A stretch of 64,000 bases of DNA from Rhodosorus marinus CCMP1338 (taxonomy: Eukaryota; Plantae; Rhodophyta). The notes under the pieces were generated by a model. The model was not told the origin of the DNA. It saw only the letters and a program-made list of their open reading frames with translations, and did not search any database. Both the position numbers and the translations under genes were made by a program. This document shows positions 1-32,862 of the stretch, piece after piece; position 1 is the stretch's first letter; every line of letters starts with the position of its first letter. The stretch covers positions 1 to 64,000 of the forward strand of contig JAMWBK010000004.1 in assembly GCA_029953675.1 (NCBI GenBank), given 5' to 3'.

Positions 1-423
1 CTAACGTAACCCCAGACTAACGTAACCCCAGACTAACGTAACCCCAGACTAACGTAACCCCAGACTAACGTAACCCCAGACTAACGTAACCCCAGACTAA
101 CGTAACCCCAGACTAACGTAACCCCAGACTAACGTAACCCCAGACTAACGTAACCCCAGACTAACGTAACCCCAGACTAACGTAACCCCAGACTAACGTA
201 ACCCCAGACTAACGTAACCCCAGACTAACGTAACCCCAGACTAACGTAACCCCAGACTAACGTAACCCCAGACTAACGTAACCCCAGACTAACGTAACCC
301 CAGACTAACGTAAACCCATAAACCCCAGACTAACGTAAACCCCAGACTAACGTAACCCCAGACTAACGTAACCCCAGACTAACGTAACCCCAGACTAACG
401 TAACCCCAGACTAACGTAACCCC
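1..423 (+). repeat. Terminal telomeric array (CTAACGTAACCCCAGA)n, C-rich strand, ~26 units
   Basis: Perfect 16-nt tandem repeat from base 1 with a few variant units near 310-340. G4 run on the opposite strand. The same unit recurs as short tracts at retroelement junctions. Confidence 0.93.
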
Positions 424-832
424 TCAAACCCCTAGGTGGGGGTTTCATTGAGGCGGCTTTCTCCTCAAGGGCCGTCCAGACCCGCTGGAACTCTCCTTCT
501 AGTACATGTGCGACCTGTACCCCTGTGTCAAGGGTGGAGTGGCCCAGGACCAGACCCGGAAGGCCGACGAGAAGCAGGCTCGCTAATGGAGGTGCTGTCG
601 CGTCCAGAGAAAGCTCGAGGGCAGCCCGAAGAAGCCGGCTCCATGTAGAAACGTGTGCTCGGGGCACGAAGCGTCGTGTGGGCACCGGGCAATGTGTGAT
701 GCGCGTCCAATGCCTCCCCTCCTCCGTGATCTCAGCTACGAAAGCGTTCCAGCGGCAAATCCAGGCCTCCCGGTCAGAGAAGAACAGAGGCTCTTCTCGT
801 GGGCGTTTACGTCCCCTGCGTCTGGACGGCAT
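424..832 (-). CDS. ORF2 (RT-RLE protein) N-terminus, truncated; reads into the telomere repeat
   Basis: Aligns with residues 1-~140 of the intact family D ORF2 (WxxRWxxFVxELTxxGRxWTRLxHCPVxTRRFxP). Confidence 0.8.
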
Positions 833-2414
833 TATGATTGCTCGTTGTCCTGCGCTTCCTGCTGAACCGACGGGTTTGTATTGGCTGCAGTTTCAGGTTG
901 TAGTCCATTCTCGCTCGGTGTGGGGTCGAGGGGAGCTGGTGTCATTTCTGCATCCGTGCTAGATCCGTTGGCAGACCGGCGCGAGCGCTTAAGTTGAGGA
1001 GGTTCCGGCAAGTTGCACGAGAGTTCCGCATGGGGATTGTCCTCTTCTTCCACATCCTGCGGTACTTGGGATGTTCCACCGGAGTCACCCTGAGTGGCAA
1101 CAGTCCCACAGGCTGCCTGTGCATCGTCCGGAGACGACGAGGCTTCAGCGGCTGCGTTTGGTGCGGCTGCAGTCGTTAGGGGTTCCGCGCTCTCCCTGGA
1201 TACCGCAGGTTGCTGTTGAAGGGCTTGTAACTTTTCAAGCCGTTGGTCCAGCATCTCGTGCACTCGGGCGAGAGTTGTAAACGAGAGATGTCGACGGCTC
1301 AGCCGCGCGCGGATGCGTATGATCTGCTCGATCGCTCGTCTCAGCGTTTGAGCCCTGACATCTCCGCCGGCGAGTCGTTGCCGCTCGTTGAACCCCAGCA
1401 GGTTATCCGCCTCTAAACCGTGCCCGGTGTACAGGCTCACCTGTCGATCGGGGTGTCGCATGGTAAAGGATCCGAAAATCCCAGTCCGGAACACACCCCG
1501 GCTGATTGCGCTTTGGAGAAGAGGAATTGCATCAGGGTGGCACACGAGGCTCACGTGTGAAGAGATAAAGTCCAAATGCGCCACATACGAGCCGGGAATG
1601 CCCAACGCCCGGCAGAGGACCGTAGTGAAGTCAGAAGCAGCCACCTCATCCTGTCGTGGGGACGGATATTTCGGAGGGTAACAAGCACTGGCGTGGTCTC
1701 AGGGCCCCAGCTGGCCCCTCCCACTGTGGCGTGTAACTGCTTCAGGGCGGCATGTTGCGTCTGCGGCCCAGGCCTTCGCATGGTGCGGATGGGTGTCTCT
1801 ACACCGTTCTCTGGTACTTCTACCGCCGAAACCGCCGCGTAGGTGGGTCTGGGGGTGTCATTCCCAAGGGCCGGGAAAGCCGTCTCAAACCGGACACCGG
1901 CAGGGACACCTGTCCCGACTGGAACTTGATTGAAGCCCGTTCCGGCCGCAAGTTGATTGACCACCGCCGTCGGCCGGTGATGCGCCGAAGCTCCCGAGGG
2001 ATTCGAAGTCTGTGCAGAAGCTTGCCACATGTGGGGCTTCTGTGCAAGTTCCGTGAGGCGGCTGGTGACATTATGTATCTCTGTGGTACTGTTAATGCGC
2101 GAGTAGAGATTGAAGACTGCTTTGTAGAAGTTCGCGATGTCCTGCTCCCCAATTCCGAGGGCGTGATAGCACTGATCGTAGCTTCGAAGTTGGTGGAGGA
2201 ACGTGTTAGCGGGAGAGAATGACGTAGAAGGCTCTGTCCGACTCCCCTCCTGGCACGGTTCTTCTGGGCGTAAAGTAGTCGCTTGTAGTCCATCATGTGA
2301 CCCATGCCCGTCCTCTCGTTCAGCAATTGGAGAGGCAGGCAGCATTCCGCTCATTGCACCGGTATTCTTCGAATTCCCCTCCCCAAACAGAGGGGAAGTG
2401 CCAGTGTTTGGCAT
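832..2414 (-). pseudogene. ORF1 of family E copy 1, with one frameshift near 1660
   Basis: ORFs 1551..2414 and 832..1644 join by a single missing C in a C-run (compare RNVRPPRMDEVA at ~19400). Stop TAA overlaps the ORF2 ATG at 830-834. Confidence 0.75.
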
Positions 2415-2465
2415 ATTTTACCCCAGGCGAACCAAACCTACAAACTTAATTGCGAACCTTATCCA

Positions 2466-2515
2466 ATAACCCCAGATACCCCAGACTATCGTCATAACCC
2501 CAGACTAACGTAACC
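2466..2515 (+). repeat. Interstitial telomeric tract with variant units
   Basis: AACCCCAGATACCCCAGACTATCGTCATAACCCCAGACTAACGTAACC. Confidence 0.85.
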
Positions 2516-2916
2516 GTGAGCTTTATTGGGCAGTCGCCTAATGCGACGTAACACTAAGCCGATTGCTATCTAGGGAATCACTCACAACAACCCCGCTACC
2601 GGGGTCTCATGCTACGTTCAAAAGAAAAAACAGGAACCAGTGGGTTCTCCAACTGGTCCGCACGTAGAGCGCCAAGCGCAATCGCCGCGTTGCCCTGCCA
2701 TAGGATCCTGTTTAACTGGGATCGTGCATCCCTCAGCTCCTCATCTCGATGCAACAAGTGTTTACAACTGTCCCGCAAAAAGTCTTGCGTCAACCTCCCG
2801 CTCCGCCCAAAGGTCTCTATCGCGATCGGGATGAACTTCTCCTCGGGCTTTTCCACACTCATCGCCTCTTTATAGTGCGCGAGCTTGTAGTTCTCCGCCA
2901 GTTTCGCTGCATACCC
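2516..2916 (-). mobile_element. Family A, 5'-truncated copy (RLE C-terminus and intact 3' UTR)
   Basis: ORF 2596..2940 contains KLAHYKE...FIPIAIETFGR. The 3' end AATAAAGCTCAC is joined to GGTTACG. Confidence 0.88.
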
Positions 2917-3029
2917 CCAGACTAACGTAACCGCGTACACTTTACTGAAGAACTCCCTATTGGAAACCCCAGACTAACCCCAGACTAACGTAACCCCCAA
3001 ACCTAGCATAACCCCAGACTAACGTAACC
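2917..3029 (+). repeat. Telomeric tracts enclosing a 32-bp family B 3'-terminal stub (2933-2964)
   Basis: GCGTACACTTTACTGAAGAACTCCCTATTGGA is identical to 3030-3061 and lies between repeat units. Confidence 0.85.
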
Positions 3030-6000
3030 GCGTACACTTTACTGAAGAACTCCCTATTGGAGCCCATTAAGAAGCAATAAGGATCCTATTGGTCAGCAAA
3101 GAAACCCCTAATGGGTTGTGTGGCTACGTTCTAAGATAGGGACGATGTCATAGTCTGCTTCGTCGACACGACGTGCCTGGGTGGCAAGGATAGCGTTTCC
3201 TTTCCACAAAGTGCGGTTCAAGATCGCCCGAGCCTCACTTACTTGCGTTGCCCGCTGATCCAGGTGTATAGTCGCTTCCTTGAGGAACTCACTCGCTTGT
3301 TGTCCCATCTGCCCAAATGTTTCCAGGCAGAAGGGGACGAAGATGTCGTCGTTATGTTCTCCGATACTGTCACGGTATTTGGACTCTTTAAACTTTTCCG
3401 CTTTCCGTGCCGCATACCCGGTCTCCCAAGACGCTTTGTGGAGGTGTGTTCTTTGCAAAGGCGAGGTCACCTTCACATCGATCACGTAGAGCTTGCCTGT
3501 TCGTGGGTGTCGGGCTAGAATGTCAGGCCGAAGCCGACTGCCTTGGTAGTGTCCGGTCGGTTCTATTGTCACTTCTAGTCGCCATTGTCTCAGCACTGTC
3601 GCCAGGGCGTCCCTGACCATGTTATGCCGAATTGTCCAACTGCCGGTAGAGCTGGTGCAGTGGTGAAGGCGTTGAATGCCTGCAGCGTCGTGTGGTTGGG
3701 AACATATCGTACACGTACTAAGTATTCGTACACCCGGCAGGGGTAATCCCAACAGTTGTCGAAGGCTCAGGTTCAGTTCTCCGCTACTTAGGCCGCGTCC
3801 GTGTTTCCTTGGCAAGTCTCGCAGCCAAGTACCCCCTCCTGATCCCTTGCAGGAGCGTATTCGCGCACGTGCCGTCTCGCTGATCTCCGCGTTCTCCACC
3901 ATTTCCTCGAATGCCCGTCGGTGACTCCAGTTGGAGAGGAGTTTTTGGGTTGAACCGATCAAGGGCCTGTCGGGTGGTGTGTGCGGGTTCTCTGCTTGTT
4001 CTTGGCTCTCCAACGATTGCCATTCTGTTAGGCGAAGTATGGGGGCCGGTGTTCCTCGTGCCAGGCAGCGTTTTGAGTGGAGGCTCGCTTCGATTAGTTG
4101 TGCTCCAAGTTGATCCGTCGAGTGGAGCAGGGGTCGAATGTGATGGTGCTCGGTCAGGTTCGTCGATGTGCAGGCATCGAGTAGCGCTCCTAGGTGGCTA
4201 GATCCAGTCCAATTGAGCTTCAGAGTCTGTCGCCAACTGCTGAAGAAGGCGAGGGGTTGTATTCGTGTTCTCATCGCTAGGCCTGCGCCACCCCATCGGC
4301 AAGGGAGCTGGATCTGCGCTTCGACCACGTCTTTTGCGGGTCCTGTGAGGCCCTGGCCTTCGAGGAGCGAGCCGCACAGTTTGTCGAGTTCCAGGAGCGA
4401 GATGCGATCGGCTTCGCGTGCGAGATTGGCTCCGTATTGTAGGGCGAGCGTGCGTAGAGCAAAGTCTAGACGCGGTCCTGCGCAGTAGCGGAATAGGCAC
4501 AGTTTAATTGGTAGCTCAGTGGTCGGTAGACGGATGACCTCTTGGACGAGTTTTTCATGTTCTCGTTGTAGCTTCCTGTTCGCGTCTTGGACGTAGGTCC
4601 GTGTGCCAATAGGGATGGAATAAAGTTGGATTCCGTCCCGGGTGACATGTACGTCGGGAATTTCCCTGTTGACGAGTCTGGTCGTCGGCAGTTGGAGTCC
4701 AAAAAGCTCGCATTTCGTCCTTTGAAGTTGTGCGCCTATTTCGGGGAGGTGGTGCTCGCTCCAGTGTAGCGCTTCTTTCACGTCCTTCAGAGGGCCAAGT
4801 AAGGTGAGGTCGTCGTGGATTGCGCTAAGGGTGATCCTCGGAAACCGGTCTCGTAGTGCTCGTAGGAGTGGGGAAAGGGCGAGCGCGTGTAAAGCAGGTC
4901 CCAACGGATCGCCTTGTTGGACTCCAGTCCAGGCTCGGAGCTGGAGCCAGTCATCGACATCGCTGTCTCGCCATCCGAATTGGCGTGGGGCGCTCTCGCC
5001 TCGTGGTCCGTAGCTCATTGTCATATGCGGCTTCAATTCGGGGAAAGCTAGCTCGATGATACGGTTTGCGAGGCGTCGGTCGATTCTGTTGAACGCGTTT
5101 GCGAGATCAAGTTTGAGGAGCACGTCATTTGGGCGCGCTGCGAGGTGGGCTTCCGCGAGGTGGATGGCGTGTTCGCAGCCGCCGCTGACCGAGATGCCGA
5201 GTTGTTCCGGGAGCAGAAAGTCGCGAAGGGGCGTGGCGACAGCGCGAAGTGTCCATTGGGTGACGGCCTTCCGCAGTACCTCAGGAATCCCTAGCGGGCG
5301 TAGGCGAAGAGGGTACCCTTGTCTAGCTTCGGCAGACGTTCGCTTGTCTTTCGCGAGGAGTCGGTTGCTGCGCATGGCTTCGAGAAACACGTCAGGGAAG
5401 CTCTCCGGAGTGGTGGCAAGCTTGCGAAGGAAGCGTACAAGTACCGGTTGCGTTGTCATGGTGAGACTTCGCAGATGTTCGGCTTTGAGTCCACTCGGCC
5501 CGGGGGCTGTGGCGTACGGTAGGTGTTCCAGCGTTGACAGGAGGCTCTCGTCAGAGGCCAAAGTCGGGTCCCATATCTTGCGTTGCAGTCCGTTGAGCTT
5601 TGCCTGTAGGGCGTCTTCAAGCTCCGAGGAGAGCGTTGCGGCCTCGTACTCAGGGAAGAGCGTAGTCAGAACGCGCCAGGTGGCAGGAGTCTTCGAGGCA
5701 AGATCGGTGGCCAGTAGGAGTTGGCTAGACTGGGACATACGTTGAGCTGTGGCGAGTTGTAGGGCTCGTTTCTGTCGGTGGCGGGTCTGAGGCGGCGGAG
5801 GTACGATACAGTTGGTGTCAAGGGTTTTGCTGTGAGCAGTAAGGTGTTCCCACACCGTGGAGAACCTTCCGTCCATAACGGCGAGCATCTGCGCAGAAGG
5901 GGCCAGGTCGCCTGTGTAGCCGAGTGCGAGACTGGGGAGAGCGAAGATGAACAGGCGTGACAGGTTCGGCGCTGACGTATCAAGGGCAAGTTCCAGGGCT

Positions 6001-6085
6001 TTCGACATGAGATGGTTCCAGCGTGTTTTCAGGTTATCGGGGACGAATTGGCGAGTAGGCGTCGGAGCCTGAGTCAGCTGCCACC
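3030..6085 (-). mobile_element. Family B, 5'-truncated copy with nearly complete RT-CCHC-RLE coding region and 3' UTR
   Basis: RT motifs LKLDLANAFNRIDR, GVQQGDPLGP and AIHDDLTLLG; knuckle CTICSQPHDAAGIQRLHHC; RLE RPDILA...VIDVKV...K. The 3' end is joined to GGTTACG. Confidence 0.92.
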
Positions 6086-7106
6086 CCAGACTGTCCCGCA
6101 AAAAGTCTTGCGTCAACCTCCCGCTCCGCCCAAAGGTCTCTATCGCGATCGGGATGAACTTCTCCTCGGGCTTTTCCACACTCATCGCCTCTTTATAGTG
6201 CGCAAGCTTGTAGTTCTCCGCCAGTTTCGCTGCATACCCGTTTTCTGCACTGCCACGCCTTATGTACTTTTCCTGTAGCGGTGAAATCACCGTCACATCG
6301 ATCGCGTACTTTTGAAAGGTCTTTGGATGGGTCGCCACGATATCTGGTCGCAGCTGGTAATTCTCAAAATACCTCTGCGGTTCTTGCTGTATGTCAAGAA
6401 AATTCCATCGGTTGAGCCATCTCCCTAGCTCCGTACAGAGCTCGTCGTGCCGTCTCTGCCATAGTCCCGTCGATGTTGGACAGTGTTGAAATCGTTGCAC
6501 CCCATTTGGGCCATGTTTCCTACGGCAACTGGTGCACTGCTCCGTTGTCCGCAACCCCGGAATCGGCAGCCCCAGCAGTTGTCGAACATTTACCTGCAAT
6601 TCCTGTGAGTCCAGCTTTCTCGGCTCTAGCAACGGTAGTTCCCGCAGCCATACCCCCGAACCCGAGCCGGCCGCCGATCGGATTCTTGCACGGTGTTCAT
6701 GCGAAACGCCCTCGTTGCCGACCAAACGTTGGAACGCGCGATGGTGTGCCTCCCTAGAGAGGGTTTGTTGTATTGAACCATGGTTCCAATCGCGAGGGGA
6801 GTCCGCTACTTCAGGTGCGGCTTCGTCTCTCAATTCGGGCAGCTTGGCCAGTCTCCGGATCCGCGGCGCCGTGTCTGGGCACAGTCTCCGCTCTATAGCA
6901 CGACTAGACGCGCGGATTTGCTCACCGATCGTCTCCGTTGACACCTGCAGTCGGCCTAGGTGGCTGATGTGTATGTCGCCACCTTGCCTGACCTGTCGCT
7001 CCACCTCCGTTATATAGGGCCACTGACCCGCATGGTCTCTCAGGGTCTGCGCCCAGGCCGAGAAGAACGCAATCGGCTGTATTCTTGCACGGGTCGCGAA
7101 CCCCAA
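3108..7106 (-). CDS. 1332-aa chimeric open frame: family A CCHC+RLE fused in frame to family B RT+CCHC+RLE (no native start)
   Basis: Continuous ORF. The junction at 6083-6092 is the telomeric 10-mer ACCCCAGACT overlapping both parents (compare 2766-2790 for A and 23311-23340 for B). Confidence 0.75.
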   Translation of the reverse strand: MGFATRARIQPIAFFSAWAQTLRDHAGQWPYITEVERQVRQGGDIHISHLGRLQVSTETIGEQIRASSRAIERRLCPDTAPRIRRLAKLPELRDEAAPEVADSPRDWNHGSIQQTLSREAHHRAFQRLVGNEGVSHEHRARIRSAAGSGSGVWLRELPLLEPRKLDSQELQVNVRQLLGLPIPGLRTTEQCTSCRRKHGPNGVQRFQHCPTSTGLWQRRHDELCTELGRWLNRWNFLDIQQEPQRYFENYQLRPDIVATHPKTFQKYAIDVTVISPLQEKYIRRGSAENGYAAKLAENYKLAHYKEAMSVEKPEEKFIPIAIETFGRSGRLTQDFLRDSLGWQLTQAPTPTRQFVPDNLKTRWNHLMSKALELALDTSAPNLSRLFIFALPSLALGYTGDLAPSAQMLAVMDGRFSTVWEHLTAHSKTLDTNCIVPPPPQTRHRQKRALQLATAQRMSQSSQLLLATDLASKTPATWRVLTTLFPEYEAATLSSELEDALQAKLNGLQRKIWDPTLASDESLLSTLEHLPYATAPGPSGLKAEHLRSLTMTTQPVLVRFLRKLATTPESFPDVFLEAMRSNRLLAKDKRTSAEARQGYPLRLRPLGIPEVLRKAVTQWTLRAVATPLRDFLLPEQLGISVSGGCEHAIHLAEAHLAARPNDVLLKLDLANAFNRIDRRLANRIIELAFPELKPHMTMSYGPRGESAPRQFGWRDSDVDDWLQLRAWTGVQQGDPLGPALHALALSPLLRALRDRFPRITLSAIHDDLTLLGPLKDVKEALHWSEHHLPEIGAQLQRTKCELFGLQLPTTRLVNREIPDVHVTRDGIQLYSIPIGTRTYVQDANRKLQREHEKLVQEVIRLPTTELPIKLCLFRYCAGPRLDFALRTLALQYGANLAREADRISLLELDKLCGSLLEGQGLTGPAKDVVEAQIQLPCRWGGAGLAMRTRIQPLAFFSSWRQTLKLNWTGSSHLGALLDACTSTNLTEHHHIRPLLHSTDQLGAQLIEASLHSKRCLARGTPAPILRLTEWQSLESQEQAENPHTPPDRPLIGSTQKLLSNWSHRRAFEEMVENAEISETARARIRSCKGSGGGTWLRDLPRKHGRGLSSGELNLSLRQLLGLPLPGVRILSTCTICSQPHDAAGIQRLHHCTSSTGSWTIRHNMVRDALATVLRQWRLEVTIEPTGHYQGSRLRPDILARHPRTGKLYVIDVKVTSPLQRTHLHKASWETGYAARKAEKFKESKYRDSIGEHNDDIFVPFCLETFGQMGQQASEFLKEATIHLDQRATQVSEARAILNRTLWKGNAILATQARRVDEADYDIVPILERSHTTH

Positions 7107-7112
7107 TCCGCC
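6090..7112 (-). mobile_element. Family A fragment truncated at both ends
   Basis: 6090-6240 is identical to 2767-2916. Knuckle CTSCRRKHGPNGVQRFQHC and RPDIVA..AIDVTV. Telomeric tract 7113-7132 at the 5' junction. Confidence 0.88.
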
Positions 7113-7132
7113 CCCCCCAGACTAACGTAACC

Positions 7133-7295
7133 GTGAGCTTTATTGGGCAGTCGCCTAATGCGACGTAACACTAAGCCGATTGCTATCTAGGGAATCACTC
7201 ACAACAACCCCGCTACCGGGGTCTCATGCTACGTTCAAAAGAAAAAACAGGAACCAGTGGGTTCTCCAACTGGTCCGCACGTAGAGCGCCAAGCG
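7133..7295 (-). mobile_element. Family A short 3'-terminal copy
   Basis: Identical to 2516-2678; flanked by telomeric repeats. Confidence 0.88.
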
Positions 7296-7296
7296 T

Positions 7297-7343: not shown

Positions 7344-7371
7344 TCAGCCTCCGATTAAACCATTCGTTCGT

Positions 7372-23260: not shown

Positions 23261-23262
23261 TG

Positions 23263-25169: not shown

Positions 25170-26675
25170 GTAGCCTTTATTGGGCAGCTACCTAATGTAG
25201 CGCATCACACGATCACTACGTACCCACTAACCAAACCTGGACTCCCTGTCCAGGAGTCTCATCTAAATTCTACGTAGGGGAAATATCGGTCTATCTCCGC
25301 GATCTTTCTCGATCGCGTGCTCAACTAGCGCAGCATTGTGCTGCCACAAAATGCGGTTTAGTTGACCCCTCACCGACGATAGATGGGAGTCACGATCATG
25401 CAGGTGCGCGCTCGCCGTTCGAAGAAATTCAAGGCTTGCCTGGCCCATTCGACCAAATGTCTCAAAAATGAACGGCACAAGAACAACATCTCGGTTTTGC
25501 CCCCTCAGCACTTCCTTATGATGCAACGCCTTCGCTTGTTCGGCCTGTTTAGCAGCATACCCGCAGTTCCAGCTCGTATGTCTCAACTGATGTCTTTGAA
25601 GTGGCGACGTCACCATCACATCCACCACGTACACGCATCCGCTCGTCGGGTATCGTGCAACGATGTCTGGGCGAATTCCAGACCCAGCAAAGAACCCCTC
25701 AGGCTCTACTTGTATCTCCGTGAAACTCCAGAGGTGTAACCATCGGCTCAGTTCCACCTTTAGCTCGTCGTGCCTCTTGGTGCGCATCCCTGATGAGGTC
25801 CTGCAGTGGTGCAGCCGCTGGATCCCACGCACATCGTGTGGTTGCTCGCAGACTGTGCACGTGTGTGACCGCCCTAGTCCTTGTAGTGGTAGCCCTAGAA
25901 GCATCCGCATGCTCCACAACATCTCATTTCGCGTCAACTGCCGCGGCCCTGTACTAGGACAGTCGCGTAGCCAGACCCCGCACCCCGTTCCAGATGCCGA
26001 TCGGATCCTCGCCCGGTCTAGGTCGTCCAGTGTTGAATCTCCAGTAAGCTCCTCAAAGGCTTGTCGGTGACACTCTCGAGAGAGCGTTTTTTGGATCGGA
26101 CCGTCAAACCTTTGGGTACCTCCTGTGTCTTCCACTGTGCCTTCCGCCGAGTCCTCCAGCGGTTGCCAATCGGCCAGCCTCTGGATCCGTGCACTGGTCG
26201 TCGCTGGCAAACGTCGTCTAATTGCGCGACTTGCCTCCACCAGTTGCCAAGCAAGTCCATCAGTTGTCCATCCAAGTCGCACCCGTCGCAGCGATTCTCC
26301 TTGTGCTGCCGCAATACACTCCTGGGAAAGCCGTTCGAGGTAGCGTGATTCAGTGGTGTTCTCTTGCAGGCTTTGTTTCCACCCTGCATGGAAGGCAACT
26401 GGTTGAATTCTCGTGCGCGTGGCAAAGCCAAGTCCTCCCCATCGACATGGGAGTCGAATCTGTTTCTCAACCGCTGCAGCCTCACGTGCGGTGATATCCT
26501 GGTGTTGACATAGGCCTCCACACAAGCCTTCAAGCTCCGAGAGGGTGATCGCGTCCGCCTCGCGGGCAACGGTACGTCCAAGGGGGTACGCCAGCCCACG
26601 TGTATGATAATCGAGCCTTGTGCCTGCGCAGTAACGAAAGAGGGCCAGCTTGACTTGGAGTTCAGCATCGGGGAG
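25170..26675 (-). mobile_element. Family C, 5'-truncated copy, open frame 25263-26675
   Basis: Inverted near-identical twin of 12320-13833; CAA where the twin has TAA. Confidence 0.9.
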
Positions 26676-26695
26676 GTACCCCAGACTAACGTAAC

Positions 26696-29600
26696 TGTAA
26701 ACTTTACTCGGCAACTGCCTAATGCAGCGCAACACTAATTCTATCAAGATCTAGGGAAAATGTGTTTAACCCCGACTCCCGGGGTCTCTAGCTACGATAA
26801 AAAAGAAAAATAAGGGATCAGTGGCTGGTCCGACTGATCCACGCGCAAAGCCCCTAACGCGAGCTCTGCGTTCCCTGCCCAGAGTGTTCTGTTTAGTTGA
26901 GCCCGCACGTTGCTCAACTCGTACTGCTTAGTTAGCATGTGCCCACAGCCCTCACGGAGAAAGTCTTGGGTCATCTGCCCTGTTCTGCCGAAGGTTTCGA
27001 TCGCAATCGGAATCAGTTTGTCATCTGGATGCTCTGTCGCCGTCGCCTCCTTGTAGTGTGCAAGTTTCCAACGCTCGGCCTGTTTTGCTGCATAACCATT
27101 GTTGTCTTTGCTGTTGGCTAGGTGTCTCGCCTGTAGGGGTGACACCACCGTCACATCGATCGCAAATCGTTGCCAGGTTCGAGGGTGTATAGCTACCAAG
27201 TCCGGACGTAGATTCGAGTTCGTGAAGTAGTCTGTAGGTGCTTGCTGAACATCTCTGAACTGCCATCTGTTAAGCCAACGCGCCAGCTCAGTGCAGAGCT
27301 CATCATGTCGCCGTTGCCAGAGCCCAGTCGAGGTCTGACAATGATGGAATCTTTGTACACCGTTCGTACGGTGTGTACTATTACACGTAGTACACCTCTC
27401 CGTCGTCCGCAGTCCCGGAATCGGGAGACCCAGCAATTGTCGGATATTCAGGTGCATGCCTCTCCCACTCAATTTTCGGGGTCCGAATTGTGGCAAATCT
27501 CTTAGCCAGACGCCTGAACCTGCTCCTGCAGCGGAACGGATTCGGGCACGATGTTCCGGGTCGAGTAAGGGATCCGTGACCAGTCGGGTGAAAGCAGTAA
27601 GGTGTGCCTCTCTTGAGAGGGTCTGTTGTAAGGAACCTTGCTTCACCGCAGACTGGTCAGGGGGGGAATTTGCTGCAGGGGCAGCAGTCAGGTACGTGGG
27701 GTTGAGGAGCTGCCTTATTCGGGGGCTGGTTTCCGGTCTCAGTCTCCCCCTAATGGCTGTAGTTGCCACTAGGATTTGGGAGGGGAGGTCGTCAGTAGAG
27801 CGGTGTAGTGTCCTCGGGGGGTTGAGCAGCTGTGGTGTAGCTTCCTGGGTGCGTTCTAACAATTTTTGTAGGTGGGGCCAATAGCCCTTGTTAGCTGCAA
27901 AGGTTTGCATCCAACCTGTGTAGAAAGAAATAGGTTGGATGCGCCTTCTAGTGCAGAATCCCAGTCCCCCCCATCGGCAGGGGAGTGCTACCTGCTTCCA
28001 AGCCGGGTGCGTTCCGTCAGGGTCGTCCGCGTGGGCTGTTTGTAGACAGCCTAGAAGTCTTTCAAACTGTAGTCGTGTGTTGTAGTCCGCTTCTCGTGCT
28101 AAACTTCTGCCGTAGTGGTAAGCCACTGTCCTTAGGGTGTAGTCAAGTCTCGTTTCCGAGCAGTATCGGAACAGCGCCAGTTGTGTGTTGAGCTCTTCAG
28201 GAGGCAGATGGGCTATCTCTTTGCCCAGTGTTTCATGCTTGTTTTGTAGTGTTCTCAAAGCTTCTTCCACATATTTTCTCGTCCCAACGGGAATGGAGTG
28301 TATGGTTACTCCATCGCGAGAAACATTGAGGTCCGGCATGTATCTGGTAACCAGTCGAGGGGATGCTATGTGGTAGCCGAATAGGGTGCACTTTTGAGGC
28401 TGTAGTTCCGCCCCAATGGTAGGGAGGGCATTTTGACTCCACAGTAGGGCATCTTTCAGGGACTCCAGGGGGCCCACGAGCGTGATATCGTCATGGATGG
28501 CGACAGTAGTCAGCTCAGGGTATTTCTGCCGCAGTGCTTCGAGAAAAGGCGCCAGTGAGAGGGCGTGTAAGGCAGGTCCCAAAGGATCTCCTTGTTGTAC
28601 TCCCGTCTGCGCTTGTAGGTGTAGTCGATCTGGATGCAGTGTTCCGTCTGTAGCTTTGGGGCGCCAGCCAAGGAGCGTAGGTGAGTCCTCGCAGTTGCTT
28701 CCATATCCCAGGCGGTAGATGGCTGCCAGCTCTGGGTAATGGCGGTCGACTAGTTGTTTGGCAATACTCCGATCAATTCGGTTGAACGCATTCGCCAGGT
28801 CGAGTCGTAGAACTGCCGATTGTGGTTCACAGTAGAGATGGGCCTGTATTGCGTGCAGGGACCGTTCGCAACCTCCACTGACGGCAAGGCCTAGTTGCAG
28901 GGGGACGAGGAGCTCCCGAAGTCGTGTGGTCACGTGACCTAGTACCCACTGTGTCGCTAGCTTTCGTAGGACCTCAGGAACGCCAATAGGTCTGACAGCA
29001 GGGTGCGCAGGTGGGGGCCCAGTAGTAGGGGACTTGACAAACGGCAGGAGCCTGCTGCTGCGGAGAGCCCTGGTCAGGACTGCCGGGAGCCGCTCCGGAG
29101 CCGTGGCCAACTGTCTCAGGAACCGTACCAGGTGCGGGTGTGCCTCACGCGTTAGCATCTGTAAGTGCTCTGCGCGGAGCCCGCTGGGCCCGGGACATTT
29201 GTCTTTCGGCAGCAGGGTCAGTTTGGCGAGTAGACTCTCATCCGAGGCTTGTCCGGCCAGCCACCTGACCCGTAGTTGGGCGTTGTCCTGTGCAAGTAGT
29301 GTCTGCAGGGTTTGCTGTAGATCCTCAGAGAGGGGGGTGTCTGTCGGGTCCGGGAAGAGGTCTTCGAGCTGGTTCCAGGTGCCAACGTTCTGTTTGGCCA
29401 TTGCAGAGGCTGTGAGGCGGTATGCAGCGTCAGAGAGGCGACCTTGTTGGGCGAGTTTGAGTGCTTGTTTGCGCCGCCAGCGGGTTTGTTGTGTGGTAGT
29501 GTCAGGACCTCTGTGTGGTGTAGCCGGCCTCGGTTGCGCTGCAGAGTCCTCTAGAGCGTTCCACACGGTATGAAAATCGCCAGCCAGGATGTGATCGATC

Positions 29601-30149
29601 TGCTTGCCAATAGGAAAGTGCGTATAGCCCAGGATCAGACCAGGAAGTCCGATGATGAGAAGGCTCGCGTCCTCGGGAGCTGTGTCGTCTCGAGCAAGCT
29701 GGAGGGCGGCACTGCAGAGGCTGCTCCATTTGTTGACGGCGGCAGAGGGGATGAATCGGCGGGTTCGGACCGGGCAGTGGGCTAGACGTGTCCACAGGCG
29801 TCCACTGTCCGTGAGCTCATTGACAAAGTCAGTCCAACGTTGGATCCATGCCGGTCGGTTGGCGTGGAAGAGGGGTTCATTCGGGCGGCGTTGAGTACTC
29901 CTTCTTCTGCGGGGCATCACTGTTGGGAGGCGGGGGGGCAGGCTTGTAGGTCCATGGCATTGGAGCTTGAAGAGTAGCCAGTGAGTCCGGCAGCAGTGGT
30001 TGTAGCCGCCTCGTGGTTGGCTGGGGTCATCTCCAAGTCGGGGCTGGTGCCAGCTGCAGTCGTTCGCGTGCGTTTCTGTTGGGGCGGCTCCGGGAGGTTA
30101 GAGAGGAGCTCCGCGTGCGGGTTGTCCTCTGCAGCGTCCTCCGGTGGTA
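26696..30149 (-). mobile_element. Family D, longest copy: ORF1 C-terminus, intact ORF2 and 3' UTR
   Basis: Flanked by telomeric tracts 26678-26695 and 30150-30183. The 3' end AGTAAAGTTTACA is joined to GTTACG. Confidence 0.92.
26792..29917 (-). CDS. Intact RT-CCHC-RLE protein (~1041 aa), CRE/SLACS/MoTeR-like non-LTR clade
   Basis: CPGPSGLR, RPIGVPEVLRK, LRLDLANAFNRIDR, GVQQGDPLGP, AIHDDITLVG, LPCRWGGLG, CTTCNSTHRTNGVQRFHHC, RHDE, RPDLVA..AIDVTV..K and FGRTG; no APE domain. Confidence 0.93.
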   Translation of the reverse strand: MPRRRRSTQRRPNEPLFHANRPAWIQRWTDFVNELTDSGRLWTRLAHCPVRTRRFIPSAAVNKWSSLCSAALQLARDDTAPEDASLLIIGLPGLILGYTHFPIGKQIDHILAGDFHTVWNALEDSAAQPRPATPHRGPDTTTQQTRWRRKQALKLAQQGRLSDAAYRLTASAMAKQNVGTWNQLEDLFPDPTDTPLSEDLQQTLQTLLAQDNAQLRVRWLAGQASDESLLAKLTLLPKDKCPGPSGLRAEHLQMLTREAHPHLVRFLRQLATAPERLPAVLTRALRSSRLLPFVKSPTTGPPPAHPAVRPIGVPEVLRKLATQWVLGHVTTRLRELLVPLQLGLAVSGGCERSLHAIQAHLYCEPQSAVLRLDLANAFNRIDRSIAKQLVDRHYPELAAIYRLGYGSNCEDSPTLLGWRPKATDGTLHPDRLHLQAQTGVQQGDPLGPALHALSLAPFLEALRQKYPELTTVAIHDDITLVGPLESLKDALLWSQNALPTIGAELQPQKCTLFGYHIASPRLVTRYMPDLNVSRDGVTIHSIPVGTRKYVEEALRTLQNKHETLGKEIAHLPPEELNTQLALFRYCSETRLDYTLRTVAYHYGRSLAREADYNTRLQFERLLGCLQTAHADDPDGTHPAWKQVALPCRWGGLGFCTRRRIQPISFYTGWMQTFAANKGYWPHLQKLLERTQEATPQLLNPPRTLHRSTDDLPSQILVATTAIRGRLRPETSPRIRQLLNPTYLTAAPAANSPPDQSAVKQGSLQQTLSREAHLTAFTRLVTDPLLDPEHRARIRSAAGAGSGVWLRDLPQFGPRKLSGRGMHLNIRQLLGLPIPGLRTTERCTTCNSTHRTNGVQRFHHCQTSTGLWQRRHDELCTELARWLNRWQFRDVQQAPTDYFTNSNLRPDLVAIHPRTWQRFAIDVTVVSPLQARHLANSKDNNGYAAKQAERWKLAHYKEATATEHPDDKLIPIAIETFGRTGQMTQDFLREGCGHMLTKQYELSNVRAQLNRTLWAGNAELALGALRVDQSDQPLIPYFSFLS

Positions 30150-30183
30150 CCCCCAGACTAACGTAACCCCAGACTAACGTAAC

Positions 30184-31680
30184 TGTAAACTTTACTCGGC
30201 AACTGCCTAATGCAGCGCAACACTAATTCTATCAAGATCTAGGGAAAATGTGTGTGTTTAACCCCGTCTCCCGGGGTCGCTAGCTACGATAAAAAAGAAA
30301 AATAAGGGATCAGTGGCTGGTCCGACTGATCCACGCGCAGAGCCCCTAACGCGAGCTCTGCGTTCCCTGCCCAGAGTGTTCTGTTTAGTTGAGCCCGCAC
30401 GTTGCTCAACTCGTCCTGCTTAGTTAGCATGTGCCCACAGCCCTCACGGAGAAAGTCTTGGGTCATCTGCCCTGTTCTGCCGAAGGTTTCTATCGCAATC
30501 GGAATCAGTTTGTCATCTGGATGCTCTGTCGCCATCGCCTCCTTGTAGTGTGCAAGTTTCCAACGCTCGGCCTGTTTTGCTGCATAACCATTGTTGTCTT
30601 TGCTGTTGGCTAGGTGTCTCGCCTGTAGGGGTGACACCACCGTCACATCGATCGCAAATCGTTGCCAGGTTCGAGGGTGTATAGCTACCAAGTCAGGTCG
30701 TAGATTCGAGTTCGTGAAGTAGTCTGTAGGTTCTTGCTGAACATCTCTGAACTGCCATCTGTTAAGCCAGCGCCCCAGCTCAGTGCAGAGCTCATCATGT
30801 CGCCGTTGCCAGAGCCCAGTCGAGGTCTGACAATGATGGAATCTTTGTACACCGTTCGTACGGTGTGTACTATTACACGTAGTACACCTCTCCGTCGTCC
30901 GCAGTCCCGGAATCGGGAGACCCAGCAATTGTCGGATATTCAGGTGCATGCCTCTCCCACTCAATTTTCGGGGTCCGAATTGTGGCAAATCTCTTAGCCA
31001 GACGCCTGAACCTGCTCCTGCAGCGGAACGGATTCGGGCACGATGTTCCGGGTCGAGTAAGGGATCCGTGACCAGTCGGGTGAAAGCAGTAAGGTGTGCC
31101 TCTCTTGAGAGGGTCTGTTGTAAGGAACCTTGCTTCACCGCAGACTGGTCAGGGGGGGAATTTGCTGCAGGGGCAGCAGTCAGGTACGTGGGGTTGAGGA
31201 GCTGCCTTATTCGGGGGCTGGTTTCCGGTCTCAGTCTCCCCCTAATGGCTGTAGTTGCCACTAGGATTTGGGAGGGGAGGTCGTCAGTAGAGCGGTGTAG
31301 TGTCCTCGGGGGGTTGAGCAGCTGTGGTGTAGCTTCCTGGGTGCGTTCTAACAATTTTTGTAGGTGGGGCCAATAGCCCTTGTTAGCTGCAAAGGTTTGC
31401 ATCCAACCTGTGTAGAAAGAAATAGGTTGGATGCGCCTTCTAGTGCAGAATCCCAGTCCCCCCCATCGGCAGGGGAGTGCTACCTGCTTCCAAGCCGGGT
31501 GCGTTCCGTCAGGGTCGTCCGCATGGGCTGTTTGTAGACTGCCTAGTAGCCTTTCCAACTGTAGTCGTGTGTTGTAGTCCGCTTCTCGTGCTAAACTTCT
31601 GTCGTAGTGGTAAGCCACTGTCCTTAGGGTGTAGTCAAGTCTCGTTTCCGAGCAGTATCGGAACAGCGCCAGTTGTGTGT
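30184..31680 (-). mobile_element. Family D, second 5'-truncated copy
   Basis: Near-identical to 26696-28190; ORF 30284..31618. Confidence 0.92.
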
Positions 31681-31684
31681 AACC

Positions 31685-32571
31685 GCGTACACTTTACTGA
31701 AGAACTCCCTATTGGAGCCCATTAAGAAGCAATAAGGATCCTATTGGTCAGCAAAGAAACCCCTAATGGGTTGTGTGGCTACGTTCTAAGATAGGGACGA
31801 TGTCATAGTCTGCTTCGTCGACACGACGTGCCTGGGTGGCAAGGATAGCGTTTCCTTTCCACAAAGTGCGGTTCAAGATCGCCCGAGCCTCACTTACTTG
31901 CGTTGCCCGCTGATCCAGGTGTATAGTCGCTTCCTTGAGGAACTCACTCGCTTGTTGTCCCATCTGCCCAAATGTTTCCAGGCAGAAGGGGACGAAGATG
32001 TCGTCGTTATGTTCTCCGATACTGTCACGGTATTTGGACTCTTTAAACTTTTCCGCTTTCCGTGCCGCATACCCGGTCTCCCAAGACGCTTTGTGGAGGT
32101 GTGTTCTTTGCAAAGGCGAGGTCACCTTCACATCGATCACGTAGAGCTTGCCTGTTCGTGGGTGTCGGGCTAGAATGTCAGGCCGAAGCCGACTGCCTTG
32201 GTAGTGTCCGGTCGGTTCTATTGTCACTCCTAGTCGCCATTGTCTCAGCACTGTCGCCAGGGCGTCCCTGACCATGTTATGCCGAATTGTCCAACTGCCG
32301 GTAGAGCTGGTGCAGTGGTGAAGGCGTTGAATGCCTGCAGCGTCGTGTGGTTGGGAACATATCGTACACGTACTAAGTATTCGTACACCCGGCAGGGGTA
32401 ATCCCAACAGTTGTCGAAGGCTCAGGTTCAGTTCTCCGCTACTTAGGCCGCGTCCGTGTTTCCTTGGCAAGTCTCGCAGCCAAGTACCCCCTCCTGATCC
32501 CTTGCAGGAGCGTATTCGCGCACGTGCCGTCTCGCTGATCTCCGCGTTCTCCACCATTTCCTCGAATGCCC
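31685..32571 (-). mobile_element. Family B, 5'-truncated copy
   Basis: Near-identical to 3030-3915. Only GGTTAC remains at its 3' junction and CCCCAGACTAAC (32569-32580) at its 5' junction. Confidence 0.92.
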
Positions 32572-32862
32572 CAGACTAACGGCAGCAGGCATTCTGTTTT
32601 GAGGGGTATTCCAGATGCTGCTCCAATTATCTCAACCCAACACGGGAAATTGGACACGGCCTCGCCAGGCACATCCATAAGCATCTTGGGCGAAGCCAAG
32701 GTAACGTTACAACTGGGCGGTCACAGCTTCAACTGGCGACCTTACGTTGTAGAAGACGCCACAAGCCCAGGGTATCTGGGAAGATATTTCCTCCACAAAT
32801 ATAAGGCGCAACTCGATCTATCAAACCAGACGCTGACACTGAACCCCAACGAAGGAAATAAC

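What the first reader, a model, noticed from the sequence alone, without database searches (positions are those of the whole stretch)
1..32580. A multi-family, telomere-targeted RLE retrotransposon system that has built 32 kb of the chromosome end
Seen: over 20 fragments from at least 5-6 distinct lineages (different CCHC/RLE sequences), mostly delimited by 6-60 bp of the 16-nt telomere repeat and almost all sense-oriented with the G-strand. Intact 3' ends join mostly at GG|GG of the repeat; 5' ends are variably truncated, as expected for target-primed reverse transcription. Established: telomere-associated RLE elements are known (MoTeR in Magnaporthe oryzae, Cnl1 in Cryptococcus neoformans) and CRE/SLACS/CZAR target spliced-leader arrays; Bombyx TRAS/SART use an APE endonuclease. 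Inference: this is a radiation of several coexisting two-ORF RLE families sharing one long, non-canonical telomere target, possibly co-maintaining ends with telomerase. I cannot confirm novelty without a database search.
Basis: partly seen in the sequence, partly recalled or inferred. Interest (0 to 1): 0.93.

Follow-up and report, generated by a model that had tools for sequence, protein, structure and literature searches.

The report
Telomere-targeted retrotransposon arrays, red alga
The chromosome end of a red alga (Rhodosorus) is mostly stacked fragments of several related jumping genes that insert specifically into its unusual 16-letter telomere repeat: a new variant of a kind of element already known from fungi, Giardia and silkworm.

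Summary
The window starts with 26 copies of a 16-nt telomere unit (G-strand GGGGTTACGTTAGTCT). Positions 424-32,581 hold 23 fragments of non-LTR retrotransposons with RT plus a C-terminal CCHC/PD-(D/E)xK endonuclease. They are separated by 6-65 nt telomere patches and always lie sense with the local G-strand. At least five ORF2 lineages (40-65% aa identity, dN/dS 0.1-0.2) and two ORF1 types coexist.

Eleven of 12 complete 3' UTRs run straight into telomere repeat with no poly(A), and 20 of 22 5' junctions fall inside GGGG/TTACG. A related family in the same window (Z) has no telomere flanks. Two independent Rhodosorus contigs show the same junctions.

- Only about 73% of the 32.6 kb is element sequence; a host SDR gene and other DNA lie inside.
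- 12.1-23.4 kb is an inverted block.
- Several copies are 3'-truncated and telomere-capped (erosion and healing).
- The 3' junction register is lineage-specific (GG|GG in 7 of 13).
- No full-length intact copy is present.

Unlike MoTeR/FoTeR, the 3' end faces the chromosome terminus, so the C-strand must be nicked, and the elements cannot extend ends the way HeT-A does. Verdict: new variant of a known kind, first in red algae.

The parts
1..423 (-). Terminal telomere array, about 26 units of GGGGTTACGTTAGTCT (G-strand on minus, running toward position 1); a few variant units near its base (300-345)
424..2466 (-). Lineage T copy. 5' end probably complete at 2466; ORF1 (2414->836) carries a frameshift near 1650; TAATG stop/start overlap; ORF2 codons 1-138 only. 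3'-truncated and capped by the terminal array (erosion plus healing).
2516..2914 (-). Lineage B, 5'-truncated (ORF2 aa ~942 to end plus 3' UTR), intact 3' end joined at |GGTTACG. Flanking patches 2467-2515 and 2915-2932.
2933..2964 (-). 32-nt 3'-terminal stub of lineage A between telomere patches 2915-2932 and 2965-3029 (aborted reverse transcription)
3030..6082 (-). Lineage A, 5'-truncated ORF2 (RT + CCHC + RLE, no stops) plus 3' UTR; intact 3' end |GGTTACG; 10-nt patch at 6083-6092
6093..7114 (-). Lineage B, truncated at both ends (ORF2 aa ~655-1022). The 3' truncation is capped by the 10-nt patch, so it reads through in frame into A (the 1332-aa chimeric ORF 3108-7106).
7133..7296 (-). 164-nt 3' end of lineage B (100% identical to 2516-2678). 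Patch 7115-7132 on its 3' side; 7297-7342 holds two patches around a 16-nt lineage A stub (7313-7328).
7343..8441 (-). Lineage F, truncated at both ends (ORF2 aa ~588-930). 3' end capped by patch 7329-7342; 5' side abuts the 3' flank of the host SDR gene without a clear telomere patch.
8525..9424 (-). Host gene inside the claimed block: intact short-chain dehydrogenase, 75-85% identical to Rhodosorus marinus paralogues. Not part of the elements.
11817..12144 (+). Duplicate (97.7%) of 8367-8664 that breaks off inside the SDR coding region and is capped by G-strand telomere repeat at 12112-12133 (healed break), followed by an 11-nt inverted telomere piece
12145..13833 (+). Lineage C, 5'-truncated ORF2 (one stop) plus 3' UTR, intact 3' end |GGGGTTACG; patch 13834-13857
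13858..14289 (+). Lineage G (72-77% to D), ORF2 aa ~278-422, truncated at both ends; 3' side interrupted by a Z-family fragment (14283-14773)
14924..15033 (-). C'-like 3' UTR in reverse orientation with no telomere flank: the one exception among 12 complete 3' UTRs
18253..19225 (+). Three stacked 5'-truncated copies: a B-like 3' UTR (18253-18380), lineage C' (18391-19074), and a B-like 3' end (19084-19217). They are separated by patches of 10, 9 and 8 nt.
19226..20942 (+). Lineage T' (61-70% aa to T): 5'-truncated ORF1, TAATG overlap, ORF2 aa 1-238. 3'-truncated and capped by patch 20943-20981.
20982..21397 (+). Lineage F second copy (ORF2 aa ~534-687), truncated at both ends; followed by a Z-family 3' fragment (21399-21568) and patch 21569-21600
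21601..23261 (+). Lineage D 5' part: apparently complete 5' end and intact 542-aa ORF1 (21632-23260). Cut immediately after the ORF2 ATG (TGATG|TCTGGGG) and capped by patch 23262-23301.
23302..23361 (.). Head-to-head junction between the + array and the - array. It contains a 34-nt inverted copy of the lineage A 5' junction (6050-6082) and a 9-nt telomere piece.
23362..25107 (-). Lineage E (ORF1 61% aa to D ORF1, one in-frame stop), 5' end complete at 25107, 3'-truncated; upstream patch 25108-25169 (62 nt, with an 11-nt variant unit)
25170..26677 (-). Lineage C second copy (98.7% aa to 12145-13833, different 5' truncation point), intact 3' end |GGGGTTACG; patch 26678-26695
26696..30150 (-). 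Lineage D: last 77 codons of ORF1, TGATG overlap, complete 1041-aa ORF2 (29917-26792) and 96-nt 3' UTR; 3' junction |GTTACG. It carries Ala at the near-invariant endonuclease Glu.
30184..31679 (-). Lineage D second copy (98.5%), 5'-truncated at ORF2 aa 579, keeps the Glu. Patch 30151-30183 on its 3' side, 6-nt patch 31680-31685 on its 5' side.
31686..32581 (-). Lineage A second copy (99.9% nt to 3024-3916), 5'-truncated. Basal 13-nt telomere patch 32569-32581 sits on a break in an LTR (Ty3/gypsy-type) element: this is the foot of the array.
46725..48004 (+). Outside the claimed range: an internalised relic. A 3'-truncated RLE ORF2 fragment is capped by telomere patch 47704-47720, then comes an E-like 5' end (47721-48004).

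Best explanation
This is the left end of a Rhodosorus (red alga) chromosome. Its subtelomere consists mainly of dead copies of a radiation of telomere-repeat-specific non-LTR retrotransposons of the restriction-like-endonuclease (R2/CRE) type.

Anatomy of a full element (about 4.9 kb):
- a short 5' UTR
- ORF1 (about 530 aa, lineage-restricted, possibly with an RRM-like RNA-binding core)
- ORF2 started from an overlapping stop/start (UGAUG or UAAUG), made of an N-terminal helical region, RT, a CCHC knuckle and a PD-(D/E)xK nuclease
- a ~100-nt 3' UTR with two covarying hairpins and an A(A/G)UAAA signal 5-9 nt before the end
- no poly(A)

Mechanism (inferred). ORF2 nicks the C-strand within the CCCC/GTAA part of the repeat, and that 3'-OH primes reverse transcription at the exact RNA 3' end. 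The second-strand break falls 1-7 nt away within GGGGTTACG. The element therefore always ends up sense with the G-strand, with its 3' end toward the terminus.
- Incomplete reverse transcription gives 5' truncations, down to 16-32-nt stubs.
- Because 3' ends face outward, terminal erosion or breakage removes 3' parts.
- Telomerase then re-caps the end, usually starting at GGGG.
- New copies insert into the new tract or into interstitial patches.

On top of this, the end suffered rearrangements: a duplication, healed breaks and one head-to-head join.

Shown: the anatomy, the junction statistics, purifying selection, and the specificity relative to family Z.
Inferred: which strand is nicked, the role of the hairpins, and the order of events.
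For: - Domains: RT by Pfam. The CCHC...RH(D/N)...E...RPD...D...K core is invariant across the lineages, family Z and distant relatives.
- Fold: the ORF2 model is confident (pLDDT 85) and its seven best PDB matches are R2 proteins over about 950-1170 columns, E 2e-21 to 6e-16, ahead of LINE-1.
- Fragments and lineages: 23 fragments and at least 5 lineages. dN/dS between lineages is 0.10-0.20 for both ORFs. Near-identical pairs have different truncation points.
- 3' ends: a covariance-model census finds 12 complete 3' UTRs, all within 1-32.6 kb, and 11 abut telomere repeat.
- Junction registers: 5' junctions fall at unit positions 4-9 in 20 of 22 cases. 3' registers are lineage-specific. Healing junctions start at position 1 in 6 of 10 cases.
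- 3' UTR hairpins: 95.5% of cells paired, 13 compensatory cells against 3.4 expected, 0 of 500 shuffles reach this.
- Internal control: family Z (24-26% aa identity) has non-telomeric flanks.
- Independent contigs: L002 and L005 show the same orientation and the GGGGT| 5' junction.
- Two-ORF arrangement and expression: adjacent genes NDN08_004843/004844 in the R. marinus annotation, plus MMETSP transcripts.
- Clade: LINE/CRE is the automatic class for 9% of the published R. marinus genome.
Against: - No full-length intact copy is in the window.
- The only complete ORF2 has Ala at a near-invariant nuclease Glu.
- One complete 3' UTR (14925-15033) and one divergent relative (L008) lack telomere flanks.
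- 2.8 Mb of LINE/CRE in a 31-Mb genome is more than strictly telomeric arrays are likely to hold, so some lineages must live elsewhere (family Z does).
- All interstitial tracts are 65 nt or shorter, against 423 nt at the terminus. Random insertion into a long tract does not explain this without an added assumption (a preference for short or interstitial tracts, or later contraction).
- CRE-clade membership was not tested by phylogeny.
- The inverted block could be an assembly error.
Confidence: 0.85

Rival explanations
1. The elements are ordinary subtelomeric LINEs with no telomere specificity. On this view the telomere patches are scars of repeated breakage and telomerase healing, and the array grew by recombination or break-induced replication between chromosome ends.
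For: Healing really does occur here: the SDR duplicate is capped at 12112, a gypsy element at 32581, and truncated ORFs at 424, 6093, 7343, 20943 and 23262. MoTeR arrays are known to change by BIR and breakage (PMC7367193). Some pairs of copies are 98-100% identical.
Against: Healing cannot explain the following:
- 11 of 12 precise, complete 3' ends joined to telomere repeat at lineage-specific registers.
- 16-32-nt 3' stubs lying between patches.
- 5' junction clustering at unit positions 4-9.
- Strict co-orientation with the G-strand.
Family Z in the same subtelomere lacks all of these features. Near-identical copies differ in truncation point and mostly at synonymous sites.
Confidence: 0.07
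2. The elements extend chromosome ends directly, as Drosophila HeT-A/TART do, and so share or replace telomerase function (the 'co-maintenance' idea).
For: Arrays lie at the very end, and insertions lengthen the subtelomere. The idea has been raised for Cnl1 (bioRxiv 10.1101/2021.08.11.455996).
Against: Priming from the chromosomal 3' G-overhang would put the element's 3' end toward the centromere. Here every copy has its 3' end toward the terminus. The end is capped by 26 clean repeats, and truncated copies are re-capped starting at GGGG, which is the signature of an active telomerase. An endonuclease domain is conserved under selection.
Confidence: 0.05
3. The inverted 12.1-23.4 kb block and the internal host-gene island are assembly chimeras of several chromosome ends, not a real structure.
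For: Subtelomeric arrays of near-identical repeats are hard to assemble. The published Rhodosorus assembly used Nanopore reads with NextDenovo and Pilon. The junction at 23302-23361 is a jumble.
Against: The boundaries look biological. The 11817-12111 duplicate ends in a clean telomere-healing junction. The 23.3-kb junction contains short, specific pieces rather than a simple switch inside a shared repeat. A further relic with the opposite polarity lies at 47.7 kb. This rival does not affect the main conclusion about the elements.
Confidence: 0.25

Closest known systems
MoTeR1/MoTeR2 (Magnaporthe oryzae) and FoTeRs (Fusarium oxysporum), CRE-clade telomeric retrotransposons
   Same: - RT plus a C-terminal CCHC/REL endonuclease.
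- Insertion into telomere repeats.
- No poly(A) at the junction.
- Head-to-tail arrays with short interstitial telomere tracts, truncated copies, de novo telomere healing and internalised relics (PMC7367193, PMC12857005).
- The REL signature C-X2-C...C-X9-RHD/N-X19-E-X10-12-RPD-X14-D fits.
- Possibly variant telomere units at 5' ends.
   Different: - Opposite orientation: MoTeR/FoTeR have the 5' end toward the terminus, here the 3' end faces it. So the other strand primes, and erosion removes 3' parts rather than 5' parts.
- Two ORFs with a stop/start overlap, instead of one ORF.
- At least 5-8 deeply diverged coexisting lineages, instead of one or two.
- A 16-nt target instead of TTAGGG.
- A red alga, not a fungus.
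- The spacing of the His in the knuckle differs.
SART1 / TRAS1 families of Bombyx mori (R1 clade)
   Same: Several coexisting lineages are specialised on the telomere repeat, and the families insert in defined, opposite orientations (PMC10088271). From my own knowledge, not tested here: SART1 is sense with the G-strand (TTAGG)n, as these elements are; it uses an overlapping UAAUG stop/start between ORF1 and ORF2; and it needs its 3' UTR structure for precise initiation.
   Different: Bombyx elements use an N-terminal APE endonuclease and carry poly(A) tails. Here no APE domain was found, the endonuclease is C-terminal and restriction-like, and there is no poly(A).
Cnl1 (Cryptococcus neoformans) and GilM/GilT (Giardia), CRE-clade subtelomeric or telomeric elements
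   Same: Non-LTR elements that form arrays of tens of kilobases at most chromosome ends. Cnl1 arrays are 5-80 kb (bioRxiv 10.1101/2021.08.11.455996). GilM/GilT are placed in the CRE clade by RT (PMC10088271).
   Different: Cnl1 also inserts into GC-rich genic sites and is a single family. Orientation and junction rules were not compared here. No sequence-level comparison was possible with these tools.
R2 (rDNA-specific RLE element; solved structures 9nl3, 8gh6, 8ibw)
   Same: Best structural match over the whole ORF2 and best sequence match in the PDB. Both are site-specific RLE/TPRT elements whose RT recognises a structured 3' UTR.
   Different: R2 has a single ORF with N-terminal zinc-finger and Myb domains and targets 28S rDNA. 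Here ORF2 lacks N-terminal Cys/His fingers, a separate ORF1 exists, and the target is the telomere repeat.

Membership tests
RLE-type non-LTR retrotransposons (R2/CRE/NeSL/R4/Hero group) | Reverse transcriptase domain of the non-LTR type | tested here: met
   Pfam RVT_1 in both long ORF2s. The fold matches R2 and LINE-1 ORF2p.
RLE-type non-LTR retrotransposons (R2/CRE/NeSL/R4/Hero group) | C-terminal Cys/His knuckle followed by a PD-(D/E)xK restriction-like endonuclease; no N-terminal APE domain | tested here: met
   Invariant C, C, C, RH, (R)PD, D and K columns across lineages A, B, C, C', D, Z and six database relatives. Motif strings. No APE (PF03372) hit.
RLE-type non-LTR retrotransposons (R2/CRE/NeSL/R4/Hero group) | TPRT footprint: precise 3' ends, variable 5' truncation, site specificity | tested here: met
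   12 complete 3' UTRs with exact ends, 11 of them in telomere repeat. 5' truncation points all differ. 3' stubs of 16 and 32 nt.
CRE clade (CRE1/2, SLACS, CZAR, MoTeR, FoTeR, Cnl1, GilM/T) | Published REL signature C-X1-3-C-X7-8-H-X3-4-C-X9-10-RHD/N-X19-33-E-X9-21-R/KPD-X12-14-D/E (PMC12857005) | tested here: inconclusive
   Present: C-X2-C, C-X9-RH(D/N), X19-E, X10-12-RPD, X14-D. The knuckle His spacing differs: C-X2-C-X3-H-X10-C, or X12-HH-C.
CRE clade (CRE1/2, SLACS, CZAR, MoTeR, FoTeR, Cnl1, GilM/T) | RT-domain phylogeny groups it with CRE reference elements | not testable with these tools
   No reference sequences were available, and profile searches returned only unnamed relatives at 25% identity or less. 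Indirect support: RepeatModeler/RepeatMasker classed 24 families (2.82 Mb) of the R. marinus genome as LINE/CRE, against 0.06% as R2/R4/NeSL.
MoTeR/FoTeR-type telomeric retrotransposons | Inserted in telomere repeats with the 5' end toward the chromosome terminus | tested here: not met
   The telomere insertion part is met. The orientation is the opposite in all copies of the terminal array and relative to every local patch.
MoTeR/FoTeR-type telomeric retrotransposons | Single large ORF (RT + REL) | tested here: not met
   A separate ORF1 of about 530 aa overlaps the ORF2 start by TGATG or TAATG. ORF1 and ORF2 are also adjacent in external loci L003, L004 and L007, and in NDN08_004843/4.
SART/TRAS-type telomeric LINEs (R1 clade) | N-terminal APE endonuclease and poly(A) tail | tested here: not met
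   No APE domain. The 3' ends run directly into telomere repeat without A-tracts.

The most novel reading that the evidence does not exclude
These elements may replace the poly(A) tail by a telomere-repeat tail. The A(A/G)UAAA signal sits only 5-9 nt before the element's end, so cleavage should fall in the downstream telomere repeat. The RNA would then end in a few G-strand telomere nucleotides that base-pair with the nicked C-strand to set the start of reverse transcription.

This would make the junction register heritable, which would explain why it is lineage-specific (positions 3, 1 and 4 of the unit) without invoking different nuclease specificities. It would also let many lineages share one target.

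Together with the outward-facing 3' ends, this gives a chromosome end that separately records incomplete reverse transcription (5' truncations) and end erosion or healing (3' truncations). That makes it a natural system for studying the interplay between telomerase and retrotransposons in a lineage whose telomeres were uncharacterised.
Probability: 0.3. Interest if true: 0.8.

Novelty: new variant of a known kind. Interest (0 to 1): 0.66.

Why it matters
Telomere-specific retrotransposons are rare and have been described in only a few lineages: insects, Giardia, a few fungi, Chlorella and rotifers. This would add red algae.

It also shows an RLE/CRE-like radiation that uses the opposite strand from MoTeR/FoTeR, has two ORFs, and has many coexisting lineages on one target. 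Until now such a multi-lineage pattern was known only for the APE-type SART/TRAS elements of silkworm.

In addition, it documents a 16-nt telomere repeat in a group where standard telomere probes failed (PMC3622300).

Finally, it gives concrete, testable predictions for how site-specific LINEs define their 3' junction.

Tried and rejected
- Exact-protein look-ups of the window's ORF2, ORF1 and SDR in public assemblies found nothing. The locus of P0159 was not retrievable.
- Both scans of JGI metagenome contigs were empty, one with the RLE-domain profile and one with the telomere 28-mer. No wide census of 3' ends was therefore possible.
- A literature search for the 16-nt unit in all rotations gave only chance hits. 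One search was too loosely phrased and was wasted.
- The profile search for named clade references returned only unnamed proteins, so there is no RT phylogeny.
- The ORF1 structure model was poor (pLDDT 48.7) and its fold search was not significant. 'RRM-like' remains a weak inference.
- Rfam and tRNA scans of the window were empty.
- A fold-back palindrome was considered as the origin of the inverted block and rejected. The inverted near-identical pairs are not symmetric about 23.4 kb and have different truncation points.
- I considered that the Glu-to-Ala change marks lineage D as nuclease-dead. This was rejected because the sister copy D2 keeps the Glu.

Full report
OBSERVATION

The window opens with 26.8 tandem copies of a 16-nt unit, with the C-rich strand on +. 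The G-strand GGGGTTACGTTAGTCT therefore runs on the minus strand toward position 1, as expected for a left chromosome end. A 12-mer of the unit occurs 54 times (up to 1 mismatch) against 0.27 expected by chance, and 29 of those lie outside the terminal tract. A 9-mer scan places patches of 6-65 nt throughout 2.4-32.6 kb. They read C-strand on + in 1-7.3 kb and 25.1-32.6 kb, but G-strand on + in 12.1-23.4 kb. No paper in the library contains the unit in any rotation.

WHAT LIES BETWEEN THE PATCHES

Two long ORFs carry a Pfam reverse transcriptase domain. They end in a Cys/His knuckle followed by RH(D/N)...E...RPD...D...K, the PD-(D/E)xK restriction-like endonuclease signature.

tblastn with these and with the remaining ORFs maps 23 fragments in 424-32,568. 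An upstream ORF1 exists as well. The intact 542-aa ORF at 21632-23260 is 98.7% identical over its last 77 residues to the sequence directly upstream of the complete ORF2 at 29917-26792. ORF1 and ORF2 overlap by TGATG in one ORF1 type and by TAATG in the other. A full element is thus about 4.9 kb. No full-length intact copy is present in the window.

LINEAGES

In the shared C-terminal region there are five ORF2 lineages:
- A
- B
- C, with a sublineage C' at 89%
- D
- F

Between-lineage identity is only 40-65% at the amino-acid level. In addition there are G (72-77% to D), T/T' (5' halves) and E (an ORF1 type 61% identical to D's). Almost no fragment contains a stop codon.

dN/dS between lineages is 0.10-0.20 for both ORFs. 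Near-identical pairs (C/C2, D/D2) differ mostly at synonymous sites and have different 5' truncation points. They are therefore independent insertions from functioning lineages, not decaying segmental copies. Several pairs are 98.5-100% identical, which implies recent activity.

JUNCTIONS

Every complete 3' end has a ~100-nt UTR ending in A(A/G)TAAA plus 5-9 nt (...TAC), and then runs into telomere repeat with no A-tract.

The UTRs of all lineages share two hairpins with compensatory changes. 95.5% of cells are paired against 59% or less when the partners are slid, and there are 13 double-change cells against 3.4 expected, reached by 0 of 500 shuffles. Rfam has no matching family.

A covariance model built from this alignment finds 12 complete UTRs in the 64-kb window. 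All are inside 1-32.6 kb, and 11 abut telomere repeat. The exception is a reversed copy at 14925-15033.

Junction registers:
- The 3' junction register is lineage-specific: unit position 3 (GG|GG) in A and B types (7 cases), position 1 in C (3 cases), position 4 in D (2 cases), and one stub at position 9.
- The upstream patch ends at positions 4-9 (GGGG|T|T|A|C|G) in 20 of 22 5' junctions. This gives apparent target duplications of 1-7 nt, all inside GGGGTTACG.
- Stubs of 16 and 32 nt of the A 3' end lie between patches.

Together these are the marks of target-primed reverse transcription at a defined site in the repeat.

An internal control is available. Family Z is a related RLE family at 24-26% identity, with copies at 54.4-56.4 and 59.5-61.5 kb and many 3' fragments scattered elsewhere. 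It ends in reiterated copies of its own last 8-12 nt and has unrelated, non-telomeric flanks.

ORIENTATION AND WHAT FOLLOWS FROM IT

All copies are sense with the local G-strand, so in the terminal array the 3' ends face the terminus. The first-strand primer must then be a 3'-OH on the C-strand. That requires an internal nick and cannot be the natural 3' overhang.

[quoted passage not shown] It also rules out HeT-A-like end extension.

At least five copies have lost their 3' part and are capped by telomere repeat (at 424, 6093, 7343, 20943 and 23262). So are a broken copy of a host gene (12112) and a broken LTR element at the foot of the array (32581). Six of ten such caps start at GGGG, which points to telomerase healing. 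The 1332-aa ORF at 3108-7106 is such a product: a 3'-eroded B copy, a 10-nt cap, and a 5'-truncated A copy that happen to stay in frame.

WHAT THE 32 KB IS NOT

Elements account for about 23.9 kb (73%) and telomere repeat for 0.94 kb. Another 7.7 kb is other DNA:
- an intact short-chain dehydrogenase gene (8525-9424)
- Z fragments
- a possible secreted repeat-protein ORF (17731-18288)
- non-coding sequence

The block 12112-23361 is inverted. It begins where a 97.7% duplicate of 8367-8664 breaks off inside the SDR coding sequence and is capped. It ends in a head-to-head junction with the inner array at 23302-23361, which contains a 34-nt inverted copy of another junction. A further relic of opposite polarity lies at 47.7 kb.

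The end has therefore also been shaped by breakage, healing, duplication and fusion, as described for MoTeR-bearing ends (PMC7367193), unless part of this is an assembly error.

All interstitial tracts are 65 nt or shorter against 423 nt at the terminus. With about 20 tracts, this is not expected from random insertion into a long tract. Possible explanations are insertion into short or interstitial tracts, or later contraction. In M. oryzae, tracts longer than two or three repeats are unstable.

ORGANISM AND OUTSIDE EVIDENCE

The SDR protein is 75-85% identical to seven Rhodosorus marinus sequences, and the next taxon is at 50%. The ORF1 profile has only 9 relatives among 1.84 billion representative proteins, and every named one is from R. 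marinus. One of them, NDN08_004843, sits next to the ORF2-like NDN08_004844, and several are MMETSP transcripts.

Independent contigs:
- L002 (JGI 3300017118) repeats the architecture: a host gene, a B-type UTR remnant, a 3'-eroded ORF2 fragment capped by repeat, a 12-unit tract, and then a T-type ORF1 joined at GGGGT|. All parts are G-sense.
- L005 shows the same 5' junction.
- L008, a more distant relative, has a 3' end without repeat.

The published R. marinus assembly reports telomeres on 12 contigs. In its supplementary RepeatMasker tables, 24 LINE/CRE families total 2.82 Mb (9.04%), but neither its main text nor its supplements discuss them or give the telomere sequence.

PROTEINS

The ORF2 model is confident (pLDDT 85.2, pTM 0.86). 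Its seven best structural matches are R2 proteins, ahead of LINE-1 ORF2p. By sequence, R2 is also the best PDB hit.

Distant relatives carry N-terminal Cys/His fingers that these ORF2s lack. What reads the target is unknown.

The ORF1 model is poor. A central beta-alpha-beta-beta-alpha-beta unit and a weak match to an RRM-fold domain suggest RNA binding, but no more than that.

The one complete ORF2 has Ala in place of the near-invariant nuclease Glu, while its sister copy keeps the Glu.

COMPARISON AND VERDICT

Functionally this belongs with the known telomere-inserting non-LTR elements listed in PMC10088271. By endonuclease type, it belongs with the CRE-like members (MoTeR, FoTeR, GilM/T, Cnl1).

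It fails two MoTeR/FoTeR features that were tested (orientation and single ORF), so I do not file it in that family. CRE-clade membership itself rests on the motif fit and on an automatic classification, not on a phylogeny.

What is new:
- the host group (red algae)
- the 16-nt target
- the use of the C-strand for priming by an RLE element
- two ORFs with a stop/start overlap
- a shared structured, poly(A)-less 3' end
- at least 5-8 diverged lineages on one target

I rate it a new variant of a known kind, with interest 0.66.

The most novel reading still open is that the RNA carries a telomeric tail in place of poly(A), which would make the junction register heritable.

Noticed in passing
window 1-423 and all patches; L002 2874-3067: The telomere unit itself (GGGGTTACGTTAGTCT, 16 nt) appears in no paper of the library. 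Red-algal telomeres were reported as uncharacterised or negative for known types (PMC3622300). Healing junctions mostly start at GGGG, which hints at where telomerase starts copying its template.
   Followed up: partly
window 54409-56405 (-), 59479-61473 (+), and 3' fragments at 10673, 21403, 35411, 37437, 38259, 38437, 39003, 43231, 48642, 53362, 56764: A second RLE family, 'Z' (24-26% aa to D ORF2; two copies 98.9% identical). Its 3' ends carry tandem reiterations of their own last 8-12 nt (e.g. CCCGTAATAAAG x5 at 43169-43238), and its flanks are non-telomeric. One copy (37437-37615) has a 15-nt telomere piece inside its 3' UTR.
   Followed up: partly
window 26795-29917 (-), codon in ...RDVQQAPTDY...: The only complete ORF2 has Ala at the near-invariant endonuclease Glu. 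The sister copy at 30287-31678 and all other lineages have Glu, so this copy may be nuclease-impaired.
   Followed up: yes
window 23256-23266: The ORF1-only D fragment is cut exactly after the ORF2 start codon (TGATG|TCTGGGG). This may be coincidence, or a hint of an ORF1-only derivative.
   Followed up: no
window 21577-21600, 25108-25130, 2965-2989, 2467-2494: A shortened 11-nt unit (GGGGTTAGTCT) or degenerate units occur just upstream of apparently full-length 5' ends. [quoted passage not shown]
   Followed up: no
3' UTR hairpin 1, e.g. window 2575-2595 (-), 26755-26775 (-): The first conserved hairpin pairs (G)ACCCC with GGGGU(U/C), so the RNA stem has the sequence of the G-tract half of the telomere duplex. 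Its meaning is unknown.
   Followed up: no
window 8525-9424 (-) and 11817-12111: A subtelomeric SDR gene belonging to a family of at least 7 Rhodosorus paralogues (75-85% identity). A partial duplicate of its 3' end is broken and telomere-capped.
   Followed up: yes
window 17731-18288 (+): An ORF with a signal-peptide-like start and nine 9-aa repeats (PATVVQGAE; 27-bp tandem at 17947-18193), with no Pfam match. Possibly a subtelomeric secreted or surface protein gene.
   Followed up: no
window 32582-36500 (+): A Ty3/gypsy-type LTR retrotransposon (RT, RNase H and integrase zinc-binding domains at 33423-35440). Its 5' part is cut at 32582, where the telomere seed of the array begins. An 18-bp tandem repeat sits in its gag-like region (32863-32998).
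   Followed up: partly
L002 2270-2325: A tRNA-like 3' half (..GGTCGTGGGTTCGAGCCCCACGGTCGGTGC) lies next to a short degenerate telomere piece in the external Rhodosorus contig.
   Followed up: no
L003 1-30 vs window 21601-21630: An external contig with a very divergent ORF1+ORF2 lineage starts with GAGGGAGGACT..., similar to the D 5' end GAGGGCTTTCGGACT.... If that contig is a transcript, it would mark the transcription start at the element's first base.
   Followed up: no
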